Of a DNA stretch of 64,000 bases, positions 3,359 to 47,102 are shown in pieces (position 1 is the stretch's first letter; every line of letters starts with the position of its first letter). A program made the position numbers and the translations under genes. Under the pieces are notes generated by a model. That model made no database searches, was not told the DNA's origin, and saw only the letters and a program-made list of their open reading frames with translations. Where the stretch lies: positions 62,001 through 126,000 of IMG/VR virus record IMGVR_UViG_3300027747_002221; one strand, 5' to 3'.

Positions 3359-4236
3359 TATTCTCTCATGTCTTGTTTGTTATAAACTACAGACTCAAAC
3401 CAATTTAAAAAATTGTTCAAGATCATATAATCTCTAGGGATGCCTGCTGCTAAAGGAGGCGCTGATATTACTCTGTTATATAGATCCTCATCTGAATCTA
3501 ATCTCATAACAAAATCAATTACTTCTTCATGATTACTAAAATCATGTACATTAATAAAAGATTGAATATTAAAGTCTGATGCTATTGTAGGGCTGCCCCA
3601 ATAGATAGGAATAGTTCTAGCATAAAAAGCATGGAGAATTTTTTCTGTGGCATAACCGGGATAAGAACCAGACTCAAAACATATATTAAATTTACGCTTG
3701 GTCAAGAAATTAATCTTAGCAAGTTCCCCGTCTAGTTTGCTACCTATATTATTGTATAAGCCTCCGCCGCTATCTACCTTCTTTATCTTATTCAATTCTT
3801 TAAAAAATTCATTACGCTCTTCGCAACCTGGATTGCTAACAACAAAAGAACAAAAATCTGTTTTTAGAATTGGATTATGCTCGCCGAGAATGTGATAATA
3901 CTTATGCCCAGTGTTGTGAATAGCATCTAATGCCCACATATAAACTACGAACAAGGGTAAGCGGAAATGCCAATTACTATAGTTATGATCAAAAGTAATT
4001 GCATAATGACAGTCATAATTGTCTGGTCTTTGATTCTCACCTGTATAGAAAATCTTAACACAATCCGATTTACTAAATTTTTTATTATTTGTTCCAAAAT
4101 TACTATCACCGAAGATCAAATAATCAGGATTTTCATTATCTATTTCCACATCAAATCTATTTGCCAATAGACTATGGAAGAATTGTGATATATGCTCGTG
4201 CGTGTCAGCAAAACCTAATTTTATTTTTTTACTCAT
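3358..4236 (-). CDS. Alpha-1,3/4-fucosyltransferase (GT10)
   Basis: KIFYTGEN, FCSFVVSN, VDSGG, KFNICFES.SYPGYATEKI..AF.A.TIPIYWG = GT10 motif as in Helicobacter FucT. Confidence 0.9.
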   Translation of the reverse strand: MSKKIKLGFADTHEHISQFFHSLLANRFDVEIDNENPDYLIFGDSNFGTNNKKFSKSDCVKIFYTGENQRPDNYDCHYAITFDHNYSNWHFRLPLFVVYMWALDAIHNTGHKYYHILGEHNPILKTDFCSFVVSNPGCEERNEFFKELNKIKKVDSGGGLYNNIGSKLDGELAKINFLTKRKFNICFESGSYPGYATEKILHAFYARTIPIYWGSPTIASDFNIQSFINVHDFSNHEEVIDFVMRLDSDEDLYNRVISAPPLAAGIPRDYMILNNFLNWFESVVYNKQDMRE

Positions 4237-9023: not shown

Positions 9024-9052
9024 ATTATAACACCTTTTCCAATAGGTGTCAA
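9024..9052 (-). promoter_or_regulatory. Sigma70-type early promoter TTGACA-17-TATAAT (extended -10)
   Basis: Minus strand TTGACA cctattggaaaaggtgt TATAAT. Confidence 0.85.
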
Positions 9053-11273: not shown

Positions 11274-11302
11274 ATTATAACACCTTTTAGGATAGAAGTC
11301 AA
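11274..11302 (-). promoter_or_regulatory. Sigma70-type early promoter TTGACT-17-TATAAT (extended -10)
   Basis: Minus strand TTGACT tctatcctaaaaggtgt TATAAT, then AAGGAG RBS. Confidence 0.85.
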
Positions 11303-33720: not shown

Positions 33721-35289
33721 TTATTGAGGCGGTGGTTGTTGATCCTGATCTTGTCCTGGCGGAAGTTGGTTTGGCGGCATACCCGGCATACCAATTTGCG
33801 GCGGTGGAGGTTCAGATTCTATCTGAGTCTTCATAGCTGCAATTTCTTTTTCCGACATTCTTAGTATATTTTTCATAACATAATCTTGACTGTAATATGC
33901 ACCAACAAAAGGTTGAATTTGAGTTAACAGATCAATTCTGTTTCTCATATTCTCAGCATCTTTCATTTCTTCAAAATACTGATCCTGGGTATATCTATAT
34001 TGGATTTTATCCTTTATAATAGTCCAGTCTTTATCAGTCAATACGCCTTTTAGTATTAATTGCGTTCTTAATAAATCGCTAAACAATTCATTAAACTTCT
34101 TGCGCAATCTACCAACAAACTTTGCAAACTTCAACTCATCTCTAGTTATCTCAGTCGCCCTACCAAACGAGATACCTGTCTGTGGTTGCATTCTTGACAA
34201 AGGAACATTCAATGCCTGATATAATTTAGATTGAAAATAATTTACATCTTCAATTTGACCAAGATTTTCTCCTCCGGCCAAGGTGTCAATTTCTGTACCT
34301 CTGCCACCTTCTCTTCTAGGTAACCAAAAGTCCTCAAGTGTAGACATCATCTTACGATCGTCTCTAATTTCACCTGTGTTCGAATCGTACACAATCTTAT
34401 TTCTATATCGAGCCATAATATCTTTTAAATATTGCTCAGCTTTTAACTTAGGTAAATTACCTACGTCAATATAAAATATTCTTCTCTCAGGTGCTCTAGC
34501 TATTCTGTAAATAACTAATGCATCTTCCATCATCTTTAATTGGTTGACAGGCTTAATTGCTCTGTGTAAATGACCAATTACTATATTCTTATCATAATCC
34601 AATAGACCAGATGGCACGAAACAGATTGCATCTGTGTTTATTCTAATACCTTGATTTGCGGTACTAGAATAAGTTGGATTATAAGTTAATCCTTTATCAT
34701 TATAAACAAAAAATTCTTCAACAGATTTAATTAGATCTACGCCAGTATCTCTGTCTTTTTCTTTCTTAACTTCACGTAATTTTTTAATTTTTCTAGGATC
34801 AATTTGAATAAGTTCTAAAACACCTCTTCTTGGATTTTTAGTATCAATGATCTTTTGAAAATATAATCTACCATCTACATACCAACGTCTAAAGATATCA
34901 TAACCTTTATCATTAAAATCTAACAACTGTAGTATCGTGTCGAATTCTTTTTCAATAGTATCTTTAATATCATCAGGTATGTCAAGCATATCTAAATTTA
35001 CTTTGACAATTGCTTCGTCATCTATTGCTGCAATTGCCTCAGTTAAAATTTCATCAATCGCGGAGGTGGTATCTGGATATAATGCGGCTTCTCTATAACG
35101 AGTAATCAGCTCATATTCAGACTTTGTAGTTGCATCCAAGTCAACATACGTACCAAAATATCCACCTGCTTGTACAGTAGACGCGCCATCATCTAATATA
35201 GGTGTGGCGAATCCCTGTTTATTTTTTGTTATCGGTTGATCATCTTCATCATCGCGACCAAAGGTAAAGCCAAATAGCTTAACTGCCAT
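33721..35289 (-). CDS. 20: Portal protein gp20
   Basis: FRRWYVDGR, IKP.NQL.M.EDA.VIYR..RAPERRIFYIDVGNLP, EDFWLPRREGGRGTEI. Confidence 0.98.
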   Translation of the reverse strand: MAVKLFGFTFGRDDEDDQPITKNKQGFATPILDDGASTVQAGGYFGTYVDLDATTKSEYELITRYREAALYPDTTSAIDEILTEAIAAIDDEAIVKVNLDMLDIPDDIKDTIEKEFDTILQLLDFNDKGYDIFRRWYVDGRLYFQKIIDTKNPRRGVLELIQIDPRKIKKLREVKKEKDRDTGVDLIKSVEEFFVYNDKGLTYNPTYSSTANQGIRINTDAICFVPSGLLDYDKNIVIGHLHRAIKPVNQLKMMEDALVIYRIARAPERRIFYIDVGNLPKLKAEQYLKDIMARYRNKIVYDSNTGEIRDDRKMMSTLEDFWLPRREGGRGTEIDTLAGGENLGQIEDVNYFQSKLYQALNVPLSRMQPQTGISFGRATEITRDELKFAKFVGRLRKKFNELFSDLLRTQLILKGVLTDKDWTIIKDKIQYRYTQDQYFEEMKDAENMRNRIDLLTQIQPFVGAYYSQDYVMKNILRMSEKEIAAMKTQIESEPPPPQIGMPGMPPNQLPPGQDQDQQPPPQ

Positions 35290-40738: not shown

Positions 40739-41494
40739 TTAAAAATCTTCAAAGGTATTAAGATATGTTACATTGCCAGCAGGAATAGTATTTGCCAAAT
40801 CGCCGGTTCCTTTTACAATTATTCTAGACTGCTGAGAACTTAGTGCAGCATCTCTGAACGTATTAGTTGTAACCTTATTAATAATGCCCTGTTTATTAAC
40901 GGGTCCATAAAAGTTTAATTTCATAATAAAACTCAATGTCCACATAATTGCTCGGCGAGTTGTCATATCGCCCTCATAATCATCGGCAAATCCTATAGAA
41001 TTTAATATTATGGGAAGATCATTATTAATATTTAATTGAGGAATAGCATGGATTGTTAAGTTATAATCTGGATTAAAGTAGGGCAATATTTGTTCTATAA
41101 TTTGTAAACCGTCATCCTGATTTTTAGCATAAATATAAAGTAATACATTTATGTTATATGGAGTGGGCGCATACTGAGCAGAAGCGGATGTAGAACTATT
41201 AATGGTTCTACTTTGTTGCATTGGACTAATTTTTCTGTTAGGATCATAATCAAGCGAAACCATTTCAAATCCCATTCTAGGAAGAATGACTTGGAAATTA
41301 GTATTATCCACATTGGGCTGTTGTTTAATTTTAGCCAAGAATTTTTGTTGCGGAGAATACGCGAGAGGCACTCGTTGTAGTTGTACTACATTTCCGTCAG
41401 CATCTTTGCGTTCAATGGTAATGTTATTAAACATATTACCAAAAGCAACAATTGACTTGCGTATGGTACCCCAGTAAAATCTTTGATCTAACAT
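40739..41494 (-). CDS. 15: Tail sheath stabiliser gp15
   Basis: FY...IRK....FG..FN.I, VPLAY.P..KF, LPRM.FE, QI.EQILPYF.P. Confidence 0.94.
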   Translation of the reverse strand: MLDQRFYWGTIRKSIVAFGNMFNNITIERKDADGNVVQLQRVPLAYSPQQKFLAKIKQQPNVDNTNFQVILPRMGFEMVSLDYDPNRKISPMQQSRTINSSTSASAQYAPTPYNINVLLYIYAKNQDDGLQIIEQILPYFNPDYNLTIHAIPQLNINNDLPIILNSIGFADDYEGDMTTRRAIMWTLSFIMKLNFYGPVNKQGIINKVTTNTFRDAALSSQQSRIIVKGTGDLANTIPAGNVTYLNTFEDF

Positions 41495-42249
41495 TATTGG
41501 AATACCTCACCAAACGGATTTCTTTCAGAAAAATCTAGCACATCTTTTCCTTCATCAGTAAATGCTTCGTTCTGAGCGCCAATTTGAACATGGCCATCTG
41601 CAGATAAACTATAATTTTCTAGTATAATCGGAGTCAACGCATTTACTTCAAATAATAAAGCATCCCCGGTTTCTAACAATAATTGATGATCTTCAACATC
41701 CAGAGTAGCCTCCGCTGTTAAACTATCAATTTCATAAACACCCGTATTGAATCTTTCATTGGAAAATTGATATAATTCACACATCATTTTAAAGACGTAT
41801 AATTTGCCAACCTGATAAAAAGGTTCTTTGCCCTCAACCTTGCGTATTTCAAAAAACGATTTAGATTTCGGAAAAAATATTATATCGCCTTCTGCTGGAC
41901 GGGGAAGAATAGTTACATTCTGAGAACCAATTACATCTGTCCATCTCTTTCTTGAAACTATAAAAGTACCAGTGTCTCGAATTTCTAAACCAAACTTAGA
42001 CATCAATTCGCCGTCGCCCTCAAACCCCATAGTATTTTCCAAATACATTTCAATAGGATAGGCATAATCAAACGTGTTCAAATAATCTTCTGATAAAATA
42101 GAATCCAAACTGTTAGACTTACGCGGCAAGTAATAGACTTCAAAACCATAAATCTTCATGGATTCGATCATTAAGTCTTCGTACAAACTTTGTTCAGAAG
42201 ACCTACCTATCGTACCACCAGATTGAAAATAAGGGTTAACGGTTGCCAT
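41494..42249 (-). CDS. 14: Neck protein gp14
   Basis: EQ.L.EDL..ES...YG..VYY.PR, KFGLE, RP.EGD.I, PFYQ.GK, DFSE.NPFG. Confidence 0.94.
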   Translation of the reverse strand: MATVNPYFQSGGTIGRSSEQSLYEDLMIESMKIYGFEVYYLPRKSNSLDSILSEDYLNTFDYAYPIEMYLENTMGFEGDGELMSKFGLEIRDTGTFIVSRKRWTDVIGSQNVTILPRPAEGDIIFFPKSKSFFEIRKVEGKEPFYQVGKLYVFKMMCELYQFSNERFNTGVYEIDSLTAEATLDVEDHQLLLETGDALLFEVNALTPIILENYSLSADGHVQIGAQNEAFTDEGKDVLDFSERNPFGEVFQ

Positions 42250-42256
42250 AATTGTA

Positions 42257-42285
42257 TTGACTTTCTATTGACAAGGTGTTATCAT
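42257..42285 (+). promoter_or_regulatory. Sigma70-type promoter TTGACT-17-TATCAT, antisense to gp13
   Basis: TTGACT ttctattgacaaggtgt TATCAT; shares AAGGTGTTA with the promoters at 9024 and 11274. Confidence 0.6.
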
Positions 42286-42319
42286 TTGCTATGTACCCTG
42301 TTAATAAAATACTTAAAGT

Positions 42320-43063
42320 TTATCCTGTAAAGAAATCTACAGGTAATTCGAATCTAGATTGCATTTCAGATTCAATCTGTGTTATTTCAGTTAATGCATC
42401 TTGATAAATCTGATCCGCATTGATTGATACTCCGCCGGGGAGTTGTACTCCGTTAAACTTCTTCAAGTTCTCACCCCATTGACGTTTAATCAATGCAGTA
42501 CAATATCTCTTAAGGAACATATCGTTATATACGTCTCTATATGTCTCTGGATCCAATATACGATAACATTCTACAATAATAAAATCCCCTACGGTAGCAT
42601 CTGCTCCCCAATCCATATCTATATATAGACGATTCATATGTCTATTAAATCTTATAGGTTTGATACCCACTAAAATTTGATTAATTAATTCTAATTCTGA
42701 TTTAACCTGATAATAGTAAATAATGTTAGTAGACATTAAACTATAAAGATCATTTACTAATATTTGATATCGAATACTAAATATATTAGTACCATCTGAC
42801 TTATTACTAAAGGGTAGTACTCTATTTACACCGACTACTGTATCCGGAACAGATATGTACTGGTTATTAATATCGTCGGTTGTAAACTGATGTTTTAGAT
42901 AAACCATTTCTACAGCATCATAATGATATTCTCTATAAAATTGAAACGCATCATCTATGCGATCTTCAATTTGATTTTCTTCAACATTTATTTCAATAAC
43001 GGGTGCACCTAATCGTCGAAGACAATAATCTTTTAGTTGTTCTCTAGTTGTTACGGTTGCCAT
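42320..43063 (-). CDS. 13: Neck protein gp13
   Basis: LKDYCLRRLGAPVI.INV...Q..D.ID.A, K.Y.TAL.K.QWG.NL.KF.G.QLPGG. Confidence 0.95.
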   Translation of the reverse strand: MATVTTREQLKDYCLRRLGAPVIEINVEENQIEDRIDDAFQFYREYHYDAVEMVYLKHQFTTDDINNQYISVPDTVVGVNRVLPFSNKSDGTNIFSIRYQILVNDLYSLMSTNIIYYYQVKSELELINQILVGIKPIRFNRHMNRLYIDMDWGADATVGDFIIVECYRILDPETYRDVYNDMFLKRYCTALIKRQWGENLKKFNGVQLPGGVSINADQIYQDALTEITQIESEMQSRFELPVDFFTG

Positions 43064-43389: not shown

Positions 43390-43400
43390 TGTAGTATTTA

Positions 43401-43889
43401 TTAGTTAAATCTTCCGTAATAAACTCGATAGGATATTGTAATTCCGTCATCCCCTATTGCAAATCCTGAGATTCCTCTGTCAAAATTATTAGTGCATATA
43501 AGTTTTAAACTACCTTGATCCTGTATACAATCTAATACTGATGTACCTAACACAGTATTTGTTGTCTGATCTTTTATAGTTCTTAACACAGTAGACCCTA
43601 GAGCAGGAAGAACTTTACCTCCAGTATCAGCAACTCCCCCAGTAATTTTTATTAATGGAAAAATAAAATTATTAGAATTATCTGTAGAGATATAAGTATT
43701 TGCTAATGTTACTAAAGTATCTACTCTTGTTAATGTTTGTTGGCCTATGGATAAAGATAATCCAGGGATAGCCACATTACCTGTAACCTCGTGTAGGATG
43801 TGAGGCATTTTACTATTTAACGAAAATTTAGTACTACCTAAATTATCTGTTATTGTAAAAGCATTATTTTTATTTAAAGATATTCCCAT
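43401..43889 (-). CDS. Hypothetical virion protein
   Basis: 162-aa beta-rich ORF in the tail-fibre region. Confidence 0.6.
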   Translation of the reverse strand: MGISLNKNNAFTITDNLGSTKFSLNSKMPHILHEVTGNVAIPGLSLSIGQQTLTRVDTLVTLANTYISTDNSNNFIFPLIKITGGVADTGGKVLPALGSTVLRTIKDQTTNTVLGTSVLDCIQDQGSLKLICTNNFDRGISGFAIGDDGITISYRVYYGRFN

Positions 43890-45537: not shown

Positions 45538-47102
45538 ATTTCAATTCTAATAAATTTACTATTTAAATCTATAACCATTTTACCGTCAGCTGAACTAAAA
45601 ATTCCTGATACTATATTGCCGGCATTTTGAGATATTTCTGATAATGTATTTGCAGTTACAGCTGTTGCGGGTATTGAAGCTGAGGCCAATTCTCTAGAAG
45701 TAATAGAACCAACCTGCAATCTAGATCCTGGAATAGAATTACTTGCAATCTCTCTTGATGTAATTACTCCCGCCTGTATCTTTGCAGATGTTATACTATT
45801 TGCTGCAATTTTTGTCGCAGTTACTGCCTCATCTTGTATCTTTGTTGAGGTGATAGTATTATCTTCTAATTTACTACCTGTAATAGTATTTGCCAATATC
45901 TTAACTGCAGTTACAGAACTATTTGCTAATACGTTTGTTGTTACTTGTCCTGCAGATAATACAATATTAGTTATAGTATTTGCTGCACCTGGAGTAAATA
46001 ATGTCCAAGATGTTTTTGTTTCATTTAATATATAAGTTCTTCCCCCAACAATTATTAAATCGCCTGCATTATAATATGTTACATCTGCAGGTAATGTCGC
46101 AAGAGTTCTAATACTTGCAGTGCCTGTATTTGCAGTATATTGGGGAATAGTTTTCCAGCCACCATCATATATGTACAAACCAGTACCTGTTACCCTAAAT
46201 AACTCACCAACATTTGCAGATGCAGGCAATGTTGCGCCAGATGTTATACCAGATCCCGTATTTGAAGATGCTCCTGTAATATAGTTGCCTAAATTTTTCC
46301 ATTGCCCTGATATAAAAATATACGATGTTGTTCCGACTACAACAGTTCTTCCAGAATAATTACTAGCATCTCCTACTGCGGGCAAGCTAACCAAAACATC
46401 TAAACCTGCAGGTGCACTTGATGTAATTATGCTGGATAATGTTCTCCATTGTCCAGATAGATACAAGTAAATTGCAGCATTGCCTGTTTCGTAAAATGTT
46501 GTTCCTTCAGGAGCATTACTTGGTTTAACCAAACCAATGGATAATGCTTGATCACCTCTAAATCTAACCCATCGTGAGTCTGACCCCGCGGCTCTAGCAA
46601 TTGTGGAATCTGCACTTAATCCCGAACCATTGCCTATGGGATAACTAGTATATGTCCAAATATCTCCTAGATAATATGCAACTCTACCTTCATAATTGCC
46701 TACTGTTGGTAAAGATGCTACTAGGGGTAATCCTCCGATATTTCCATTTAATATCCCTCCAGTATATGCTGCAATACTAGCATCAACATATCCTTTTGTA
46801 GATAATTCTGCATCCAACCATTTAATAGTTCCTGCTTCATCTAATATTAAATGAGGCGTACCATTAATTGTAAACCCTATTTTACCTGTACCCGCATGGT
46901 ACATACCTGTGTTAGTATCACCATCCCATGAGTATCCGGGAAAATCCTGAGTATCAGATATGTAAGATTTATACTGTCCGCTATTATAAACAGCATTGAA
47001 ATTTGCATTAACCTTTATAAAGGCTTCTCGTAAAACGTCGCCGTCTCCTGCATTTGCAGCTGAACCCACGTTTACGTTTGATAAATTTGTTGTATTTGGC
47101 AT
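45534..47102 (-). CDS. Tail fibre / baseplate-attached fibre protein
   Basis: gp9/10-type N-terminus NVG..AN.G.GD.LR.AF.KVN.NF; LP..G..Y....W repeats; 10-aa (S/A)IT..KI repeats. Confidence 0.78.
   Translation of the reverse strand: MPNTTNLSNVNVGSAANAGDGDVLREAFIKVNANFNAVYNSGQYKSYISDTQDFPGYSWDGDTNTGMYHAGTGKIGFTINGTPHLILDEAGTIKWLDAELSTKGYVDASIAAYTGGILNGNIGGLPLVASLPTVGNYEGRVAYYLGDIWTYTSYPIGNGSGLSADSTIARAAGSDSRWVRFRGDQALSIGLVKPSNAPEGTTFYETGNAAIYLYLSGQWRTLSSIITSSAPAGLDVLVSLPAVGDASNYSGRTVVVGTTSYIFISGQWKNLGNYITGASSNTGSGITSGATLPASANVGELFRVTGTGLYIYDGGWKTIPQYTANTGTASIRTLATLPADVTYYNAGDLIIVGGRTYILNETKTSWTLFTPGAANTITNIVLSAGQVTTNVLANSSVTAVKILANTITGSKLEDNTITSTKIQDEAVTATKIAANSITSAKIQAGVITSREIASNSIPGSRLQVGSITSRELASASIPATAVTANTLSEISQNAGNIVSGIFSSADGKMVIDLNSKFIRIEI

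What the first reader, a model, noticed from the sequence alone, without database searches (positions are those of the whole stretch)
42257..42296. Phage early-type promoter pointing antisense into the late neck operon
Seen: the 70-nt gap between gp13 and gp14 holds, on the + strand, TTGACT-17-TATCAT with an extended -10 TG, plus a nested second TTGACA. Its spacer ends AAGGTGT-TA, the same signature as the minus-strand promoters at 9024-9052 and 11274-11302. No credible + strand gene follows. Inference: it makes an antisense RNA that silences premature late-gene expression, or it primes an R-loop replication origin as T4 origins do.
Basis: partly seen in the sequence, partly recalled or inferred. 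Interest (0 to 1): 0.65.

Follow-up and report, generated by a model that had tools for sequence, protein, structure and literature searches.

The report
Conserved backward-facing early promoter, neck operon
Between two neck genes of an uncultivated T4-like phage sits a short non-coding element, strongly conserved in its relatives and present twice per genome, that reads as a host-type early promoter firing against the direction of the genes; what its untranslated transcript does is still unknown.

Summary
The 70-nt gp13-gp14 gap (42250-42319) carries TTGACT-17-TATCAT on the + strand, with a TG-extended -10 and a nested TTGACA.

It is not chance:
- It fits the phage's own early-promoter grammar, TTGAC-N14-RTGTTATNNT. 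That pattern has 18 exact hits in the 222-kb genome and none for the reversed control.
- The 52-nt core is 85-100% identical in relatives whose neighbouring four-fold sites are only 37-59% identical.
- All 25 distinct variants keep the 17-nt spacer, the TG, and T1/A2/T6 of the -10. Only -10 positions 3-5 vary.

Other findings:
- The gap exists only in one clade; more distant T4-like phages have gaps of 0-11 nt.
- A second copy lies 80 kb away, also facing against the genes.
- The two copies share genome-specific variants.
- No conserved ORF, RNA fold or Rfam family follows.

Best reading: a selected sigma-70-type antisense promoter module. Its role is inferred to be early antisense or convergent transcription. 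An R-loop origin is the rival, with little support: no skew shift, and no AT-rich stretch downstream of the second copy. No RNA data could be obtained.

The parts
42250..42319 (.). 70-nt gp13-gp14 intergenic gap that holds the element
   Evidence: A gap of 65-112 nt occurs only in one clade: gp14 at least 52% identical in the protein search, plus further members at 57-61% found by DNA pattern. More distant T4-like loci have gaps of 0-11 nt.
42257..42262 (+). -35 hexamer TTGACT; it is part of the distal TATTGAC repeat (42255-42261)
   Evidence: It reads T(T/A)GA(C/T)(T/A) across all clade members.
42266..42273 (+). Second TATTGAC repeat, 11 bp after the first, containing the nested TTGACA (42268-42273). 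It lies in the promoter spacer.
   Evidence: It is as conserved as the -35, which a plain promoter model does not explain. It gives no usable second promoter, because the -10 candidate TATGTA lacks T6.
42277..42285 (+). TG-extended -10: TGT then TATCAT (42280-42285), 17 nt after the -35
   Evidence: In 25 of 25 distinct variants the TG and T1, A2, T6 are invariant, while positions 3-5 vary (TATCAT, TATTAT, TATACT, TAGTAT, TATTCT).
42289..42306 (+). Conserved downstream box starting CTATG. The predicted transcription start is at 42291-42293 (inferred from the distance to the -10).
   Evidence: It is identical in the second copy of the same genome. It differs between lineages but matches between copies.
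41494..42249 (-). gp14 neck protein gene; it starts 7 nt from the -35 and runs away from the promoter
42320..43063 (-). gp13-like head-tail adaptor gene; the predicted transcript is antisense to its 3' end
43395..43402 (-). Late-promoter variant AATAAATA heading the operon: 108-aa gene, gp13, gap, gp14, gp15, gp16, gp17
   Evidence: The perfect TATAAATA motif occurs 31 times on the gene strand and 4 times on the other.
9024..9052 (-). Sense-oriented early promoter of the same family (comparator)
11274..11302 (-). Sense-oriented early promoter of the same family (comparator)

Best explanation
The gap holds a selected cis-element of about 52 nt. Its core is a host sigma-70-type promoter of the phage's early class: TTGACT, a 17-bp spacer, TG, then TATCAT. 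It faces against the flow of the genes.

Shown:
- The element is under purifying selection.
- Its variation follows sigma-70 rules.
- It fits the phage's early-promoter pattern.
- It has a paralogue 80 kb away in the same antisense orientation.
- The two copies are kept alike within a genome.

Inferred:
- Unmodified host RNA polymerase fires from it early in infection, starting near 42291-42293.
- It makes an untranslated transcript complementary to the 3' end of gp13. This transcript is probably short-lived because it is untranslated and C-rich.
- The transcript, or the convergent polymerase traffic itself, acts in cis. It would damp or cut off sense transcripts running from gp13 into gp14-gp17 until sigma-70 promoters are shut off and gp55-type late transcription takes over.

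The second TATTGAC repeat and the copy-matched downstream box point to a further partner, either a protein or the RNA 5' end. That partner is not identified.
For: - The pattern TTGAC-N14-RTGTTATNNT has 18 hits and 0 in the control. Fifteen hits are on the gene strand directly before ribosome-binding sites and starts. Three are on the opposite strand, including this site.
- The 190-kb relative has the same three opposite-strand sites.
- Core identity is 85-100% (71% at 55% gp14 identity), against 36-59% at four-fold sites of gp14.
- 25 of 25 variants, chosen without reference to the -10, keep TAnnnT at 17 nt together with TG.
- Distant members swap hexamers but keep the architecture: TAGACA-17-TAACAT, TTGATT-17-TATAAT, TTGATT-17-TAAAAT.
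- A second copy lies at G000:C1:23793-23821.
- The flanking genes of that copy vary among relatives, but its orientation against the genes does not.
- There is no conserved RNA fold on either strand and no Rfam match, so a structured sense RNA is unlikely.
- Precedents: both T4 strands are transcribed at several sites at different times (PMC2988020). Phikmvvirus phages have a conserved antisense promoter, and PAK_P3 has antisense RNAs (PMC10914365).
Against: - No transcript data.
- Conservation covers nearly all 52 nt, more than a promoter needs.
- The -10 is held at a sub-consensus TATCAT, whereas every sense family member has TATAAT.
- The predicted RNA does not overlap the gp14 start, and it has no recognisable terminator.
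- The upstream genes at the two copies (gp13 and a DUF6321 gene) have nothing obvious in common.
- The nearest sense early promoters lie about 40 kb upstream of this copy, so early read-through into gp14 may not be a real problem.
Confidence: 0.5

Rival explanations
1. R-loop replication origin of the T4 oriF/oriG or oriE kind. The antisense transcript stays hybridised to the DNA and primes rightward leading-strand synthesis. The TATTGAC repeats act like iterons.
For: - T4 minimal origins are a promoter plus a downstream unwinding element.
- T4 has several origins per genome (PMC3016281).
- Here there are 2-3 backward-facing early promoters per genome, at conserved places.
- Two direct repeats sit one helical turn apart.
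- The first 100 nt after the start at this copy are 71% A+T, against 64% for the genome.
Against: - No GC- or AT-skew inflection at 104.3 kb or 23.8 kb; the skew follows gene strand only.
- Downstream A+T at the second copy is 60% and at the third site 57%, both below the genome mean.
- There are only two 7-nt repeats, not an array.
- The start of the RNA is C-rich, which does not favour stable RNA-DNA hybrids (general knowledge).
- T4 origins share no sequence, whereas these copies are homogenised.
Confidence: 0.17
2. A DNA site for a sequence-specific protein, or for polymerase itself as a stable roadblock or marker. The binding is the function, and productive transcription is incidental.
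For: - Conservation spans about -42 to +20, roughly a polymerase footprint, including a spacer repeat and a downstream box that a promoter does not need.
- The downstream box is lineage-specific but matched between copies, as expected if it co-evolves with a binding partner.
- The element sits where a terminator would: 6-20 nt after the upstream stop codon.
Against: - CTATTGAC is not enriched in the genome: 8 found, 8.7 expected.
- No candidate binding protein was identified.
- Copy matching can be explained by gene conversion alone.
Confidence: 0.18
3. A sense-strand signal in the late mRNA, such as a translation, processing or alternative-promoter signal for gp14. Its promoter look on the other strand would be incidental.
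For: - The element always lies just before a sense gene start. That is 8 nt before the gp14 ATG, and overlapping the ATG of a downstream gene in L097 and L106.
- gp14 has no Shine-Dalgarno sequence.
Against: - Lacking a strong Shine-Dalgarno sequence is common here: only 97 of 244 ORFs have one.
- No conserved RNA structure.
- No sense sigma-70 or TATAAATA promoter in the gap.
- An AAC-N16-GTC reading on the sense strand fails in L044 and L045, which lose AAC but keep or improve the antisense -10.
- In this genome's second copy the next start is 26 nt further on and has its own GGAG.
- The invariant positions are exactly TG, T1, A2 and T6 of the antisense -10.
Confidence: 0.1
4. Chance promoter-like sequence, or a neutral remnant of an old insertion.
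For: Generic promoter-like matches are as common as in shuffled sequence.
Against: - The core is conserved far above four-fold sites.
- The specific pattern has no control hits.
- There are two conserved copies per genome.
Confidence: 0.03

Closest known systems
The phage's own early promoters, which resemble the PeSL terminator-promoter cassettes of T4-like phages (PMC2839356, PMC4122927)
   Same: The same grammar: TTGAC, 17-nt spacer, G-R-TGT, then TAT..T. It is a repeated, conserved short motif in a T4-like genome.
   Different: It faces against the genes. No gene or ribosome-binding site follows, and no stem-loop precedes it. The -10 is sub-consensus rather than TATAAT. It carries an extra repeat in the spacer and a conserved downstream box. 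It sits in a core late operon, not in a hyperplastic region.
T4 replication origins oriF/oriG (middle promoter plus unwinding element) and oriE (early promoter plus iterons) (PMC3016281)
   Same: A host-polymerase promoter with no coding task, in or near late genes. There are several per genome, and direct repeats are present.
   Different: There is no clear AT-rich unwinding element at the paralogue, only two repeats, no skew signal, and the copies share sequence.
Antisense promoters and antisense RNAs of virulent phages (LUZ19 and other Phikmvvirus P001, PAK_P3 asRNAs; PMC10914365), and T4 sites transcribed on both strands (PMC2988020)
   Same: A conserved promoter opposite to an otherwise one-directional genome, overlapping structural genes. 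The proposed role is to limit unwanted transcription.
   Different: Those cases were mapped experimentally, and LUZ19's promoter uses the phage polymerase. This one is a host sigma-70 type, is known only from sequence, and comes as homogenised paralogous copies.

Membership tests
Sigma-70 extended -10 promoter | -35 close to TTGACA | tested here: met
   TTGACT, 5 of 6. The motif T(T/A)GA(C/T)N is kept in all clade members.
Sigma-70 extended -10 promoter | Spacer of 17 +/- 1 bp | tested here: met
   Exactly 17 in 25 of 25 variants, and also in L041, L044 and L045.
Sigma-70 extended -10 promoter | -10 TAnnnT with TG one base upstream | tested here: met
   TGT-TATCAT. T1, A2, T6 and TG are invariant in 25 of 25 variants. 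Among the more distant members, L041 keeps TG, while L044 and L045 lack TG but have TAAAAT and TATAAT.
Sigma-70 extended -10 promoter | A transcript starting 6-8 nt after the -10 | not testable with these tools
Early promoter family of this phage | TTGAC-N14-RTGTTATNNT | tested here: met
   Exact match, one of 18 hits, with 0 control hits.
Early promoter family of this phage | Consensus TATAAT and an A-tract (AAAAG) before GTGT | tested here: not met
   TATCAT here, and TATACT in the paralogue. AAGG is not conserved in relatives, which read ACGG, CAGG, TCGA or ATGA.
Early promoter family of this phage | Co-oriented gene with a ribosome-binding site within about 30 nt | tested here: not met
   The + strand ORF from ATG 42291 is 37 aa here, 56 unrelated aa at the paralogue, and 4 codons in relatives.
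PeSL cassette | Terminator stem-loop directly upstream of the promoter | tested here: not met
   The sequence upstream of the -35 is the start of gp14 coding. No hairpin was found.
T4-type R-loop origin (oriF/oriG) | Promoter followed by an A+T-rich unwinding element | tested here: inconclusive
   A+T over the first 100 nt after the start: 71% at this copy, 60% at the paralogue, 57% at the third site, 64% for the genome.
T4-type R-loop origin (oriF/oriG) | Replication starts there | not testable with these tools
   Cumulative skew is monotonic, with no inflection. This is uninformative in a genome with 228 of 245 ORFs on one strand.
T4 oriE-type origin | Cluster of evenly spaced direct repeats (iterons) beside an early promoter | tested here: inconclusive
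   Only two 7-nt repeats, 11 bp apart, and they lie inside the promoter.
Cis-antisense RNA | A defined RNA with its own 3' end, complementary to a target mRNA | tested here: inconclusive
   Complementarity to the gp13 3' end follows from position. The nearest downstream terminator-like site is a weak one about 580 nt away. There is no Rfam family and no conserved fold.

The most novel reading that the evidence does not exclude
The backward-facing promoters would form one system. This genome and a 190-kb relative each have three of them. Two carry a double TATTGAC repeat and a lineage-specific downstream box that matches between copies. Under this reading they are either the phage's replication origins, with an initiator that reads the box, or the source of short RNAs with a shared 5' end that act in trans. 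This system would be specific to a clade of uncultivated T4-like phages and is not described for T4.
Probability: 0.2. Interest if true: 0.7.

Novelty: new variant of a known kind. Interest (0 to 1): 0.5.

Why it matters
T4-like phages normally couple gp13 and gp14 tightly. One clade has broken that coupling to keep a 52-nt non-coding element as conserved as protein-coding positions, so the element must do something important.

If it is an active antisense promoter, it is a clean, sequence-defined case of host-polymerase antisense transcription built into a late structural operon. It would come with a natural paralogue for comparison.

If it is an origin, it would give the first sequence-recognisable origin motif in this large group of environmental phages.

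Either way it is directly testable with a short synthetic fragment.

Tried and rejected
- **Leaderless + strand ORF from ATG 42291 (MYPVN...).** It is 37 aa here and 56 unrelated aa at the paralogue. It stops after 4 codons in relatives with the extra G. Rejected.
- **Sense mini-ORF of 6 codons starting at the ATG inside ATGATAACA.** It is absent at the paralogue and in L046. Rejected.
- **Conserved RNA structure.** Consensus folding gave 0.0 kcal/mol on the sense strand and -0.5 on the antisense strand, no better than column shuffles. A by-eye hairpin (CAGGGT with ACCTTG) fails in the paralogue and in L023.
- **Rfam.** No match down to E = 1.
- **Single-sequence fold of the predicted RNA.** The z-score is -2.7. 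It is antisense to coding sequence and not conserved, so I give it no weight.
- **Sense-strand promoters.** There is no TATAAATA-type late promoter in the gap, no consistent sigma-70 -10, and the AAC-N16-GTC reading fails in L044 and L045.
- **Second promoter from the nested TTGACA.** The only -10 candidate, TATGTA, lacks T6.
- **Missing Shine-Dalgarno sequence of gp14 as a clue.** This is common in the genome.
- **GC and AT skew.** No inflection.
- **Genome-wide enrichment of CTATTGAC.** None.
- **Further copies by nhmmer.** Only two in the genome.
- **Fur, DnaA and IHF box resemblances.** I looked at these only by eye and from memory. They were weak and were not tested with a tool.
- **RNA evidence.** I did not try it by another route, and read laying was not used.
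- **Megablast to named phages.** Nothing. The nearest cultured relatives are at most 40% identical in gp14.
- **Papers not held.** Two look-ups, of the T4 genome review and the repEA/repEB paper, found nothing held.

Full report
**What the window is**

The window is bases 62001-126000 of a 222,055-bp IMG/VR virus record with 35.6% G+C. It is a T4-like phage.
- The ORFs around the finding match the T4 tail-sheath stabiliser gp15, the T4 neck protein gp14 (head closure Hc2), a head-tail adaptor (gp13 position), and the small and large terminase subunits.
- No named phage matches at the DNA level. The best cultured relatives are at most 40% identical in gp14.
- 228 of 245 crude ORFs lie on the - strand.
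- Late promoters are of the T4 type. TATAAATA occurs 31 times on the - strand and 4 times on the + strand, mostly just before genes.
- The variant AATAAATA at 43395-43402 heads an operon that runs: 108-aa gene, gp13, the gap, gp14, gp15, gp16, gp17.

**The observation**

- gp14 ends its upstream side at 42249, and gp13's stop codon begins at 42320. That leaves 70 nt.
- On the + strand: TTGACT (42257-42262), 17 nt, TATCAT (42280-42285), with TG at 42277-42278 and a nested TTGACA at 42268-42273.
- The promoters at 9024-9052 and 11274-11302 share the AAGGTGTTAT stretch.

**Is it more than chance?**

Generic promoter-likeness is not significant: 71 sites against 71.4 in shuffles. The specific grammar is.
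- AGGTGTTATNAT occurs ten times in the genome. Nine are on the - strand, each with TTGAC at the same distance and a ribosome-binding site plus ATG a few bases downstream. One is on the + strand, and that is this site.
- The looser pattern TTGAC-N14-RTGTTATNNT has 18 exact hits and none for the reversed control. Base composition predicts about 0.05.
- Fifteen of those hits are on the gene strand and three on the opposite strand:
  - this site, called A below;
  - a second site at G000:C1:23793-23821, called B;
  - a third at 153234-153262, back to back with a sense promoter.
- A complete 190-kb relative has 15 hits. Twelve are on its gene strand, and three are opposite, at the homologous three places.

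**Conservation**

Eighty relatives were fetched through gp14.
- All loci with gp14 at least 74% identical keep the gap almost unchanged.
- Loci at 52-61% identity keep a gap of 65-112 nt with the same architecture but different letters.
- The 31 more distant loci whose gap could be measured have gaps of 0-11 nt. The element is therefore an insertion specific to one clade, and it broke the usual gp13-gp14 coupling.
- The 52-nt core is 85-100% identical in relatives with 74-93% gp14 identity, where four-fold degenerate sites of the adjacent gp14 are only 37-59% identical. It is still 71% identical at 55% gp14 identity, where four-fold sites are at 36%. That is purifying selection as strong as on first and second codon positions.

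**Which strand is read?**

I collected every distinct variant using features that do not include the -10: two near-TATTGAC repeats 11 bp apart, plus CTATG downstream. This gave 25 variants.
- All 25 have TAnnnT exactly 17 nt after the -35, and all 25 have TG one base before it.
- The hexamers are TATCAT (16), TATTAT (3), TATACT (3), TAGTAT (2) and TATTCT (1). Only positions 3-5 vary, which are the positions sigma-70 cares least about (established knowledge).
- More distant members read TAGACA-17-TAACAT, TTGATT-17-TATAAT and TTGATT-17-TAAAAT. A weaker -35 goes with a better -10.
- A sense-strand reading has no such logic. There is no late promoter and no consistent -10 on that strand. An AAC-N16-GTC reading is lost in L044 and L045.
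- There is no conserved RNA fold on either strand and no Rfam match.
- The variants are related by descent, so these counts are not independent trials. The pattern of what changes and what does not is the evidence.

**The second copy**

nhmmer finds exactly two copies in the genome.
- Copy B lies after the stop codon of a DUF6321 gene and before a 38-codon ORF with its own GGAG. It is again oriented so that the promoter (TTGACT-17-TATACT with TG) faces against the genes.
- B-type copies in other contigs have different neighbours but the same orientation.
- Within this genome, A and B share 21 identical bases downstream of the -10.
- Within the 190-kb relative, A and B share that relative's own variants over about 50 nt.
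- An A-type copy (L221) and a B-type copy (L100) from another lineage share a different downstream box. Those two are on separate contigs, so this case is only consistent with the pattern.
- Either gene conversion keeps the copies alike or both must match a common partner. I cannot tell which.

**What the promoter model does not explain**

- The second TATTGAC repeat sits in the spacer and is as conserved as the -35.
- The downstream box (42289-42306) is conserved within lineages.
- The -10 is held at TATCAT, while every sense promoter of the family has TATAAT.
- These features suggest tuning or a binding partner. CTATTGAC is not enriched elsewhere in the genome.

**What the transcript would be**

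- The start is predicted at 42291-42293 from its distance to the -10.
- The RNA runs away from gp14 and is antisense to the gap's distal part and to the 3' end of gp13.
- No conserved ORF follows. The ATG at 42291 gives 37 aa here, 56 unrelated aa at B, and 4 codons in most relatives.
- No convincing terminator follows.
- Beyond the first 100 nt, which are balanced in C and G, the RNA is C-rich and G-poor. Being untranslated as well, it would be a natural Rho substrate. This is an inference from general knowledge.

**Mechanism**

The shown part is a selected, duplicated element with promoter grammar that faces against the genes.

The most likely working, inferred, runs as follows.
- Host polymerase fires from it early.
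- The antisense RNA or the head-on traffic limits sense transcripts that cross from gp13 into gp14-gp17.
- This ends when sigma-70 transcription gives way to late transcription.

Precedents exist:
- T4 transcribes both strands at several sites at different times (PMC2988020).
- Phikmvvirus phages keep an antisense promoter that is thought to block unwanted elongation, and PAK_P3 makes antisense RNAs (PMC10914365).

Weak points:
- No RNA data could be had.
- The RNA does not cover the gp14 start.
- The nearest sense early promoters are about 40 kb upstream of A.

**The origin idea**

T4 oriF and oriG are a promoter plus an A+T-rich unwinding element. oriE depends on an early promoter and has direct repeats (PMC3016281). 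Measured against that:
- A+T over the first 100 nt after the start is 71% at A, 60% at B and 57% at the third site. The genome is 64%.
- Skew shows no inflection, though in a one-strand genome that says little.
- There are two repeats, not an array.

I keep this as a rival at about 0.17.

**Comparison with known elements**

The element works like a sigma-70 extended -10 promoter and fits this phage's early class. It is not an ordinary member of that class:
- there is no gene behind it;
- there is no upstream stem-loop, as PeSL cassettes have (PMC2839356, PMC4122927);
- the -10 is sub-consensus;
- it has extra conserved parts.

I file it as a new variant of a known kind: an antisense promoter in a phage late region. 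The two-copy, copy-matched architecture is the new part. I found no description of it in the papers searched. That is a limited search.

**Verdict**

- Observation: confirmed.
- Interpretation: partly supported.
- Function: open.
- Interest: 0.5.

Noticed in passing
G000:C1:23793-23845 (L089 about 3775-3845), outside the window: A second full copy of the element. It lies after a DUF6321 gene and before a 38-codon ORF, with TTGACT-17-TATACT facing against the genes. It shares 21 identical bases downstream of the -10 with the window copy.
   Followed up: yes
G000:C1:153179-153262, outside the window: A third backward-facing early-type promoter (153234-153262, +, with perfect TATAAT). It stands back to back with a sense promoter (153179-153207, -) and overlaps a GGGG...CCCC stem. 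No + strand gene follows. The homologous pair exists in the 190-kb relative (45791-45874).
   Followed up: partly
window 9024-9052, 11274-11302 and 13 further sites on the gene strand of the genome: A tight family of near-consensus early promoters (gcTTGACa, 10 nt, AAAAGGTGTTATAAT). Several are preceded by terminator-like hairpins, resembling the PeSL cassettes described for T4-like phages.
   Followed up: partly
G000:C1:28018-33784 and 138861-139233, outside the window: ARAGORN finds 25 tRNA genes in one cluster on the gene strand, headed by an early promoter at 33847-33875. It also finds a tmRNA-like gene with tag ANDEQFALAA.
   Followed up: no
window 42249 (gp14 start) and genome-wide: Only 97 of 244 crude ORFs have GGAG, GAGG or AGGA before the start, and 103 have no GGA at all. 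Many genes of this phage, gp14 included, would be translated without a classical Shine-Dalgarno sequence. The start calls are crude.
   Followed up: partly
L097 1928-2030, L106 2430-2520: In some relatives the B-type element ends in the ATG of a gene beginning MK(N/S)IKE. In this genome and in the 190-kb relative, only a short stretch similar to a later part of that gene remains after the element, as if its start had been deleted.
   Followed up: no
window 31774-31759 (-): A 2-mismatch match to the double repeat (GTCAGTAGAAAGTAAA) is the start of a coding sequence just after a TATAAATA late promoter. It is conserved in relatives because it codes, and it is not related to the element.
   Followed up: yes
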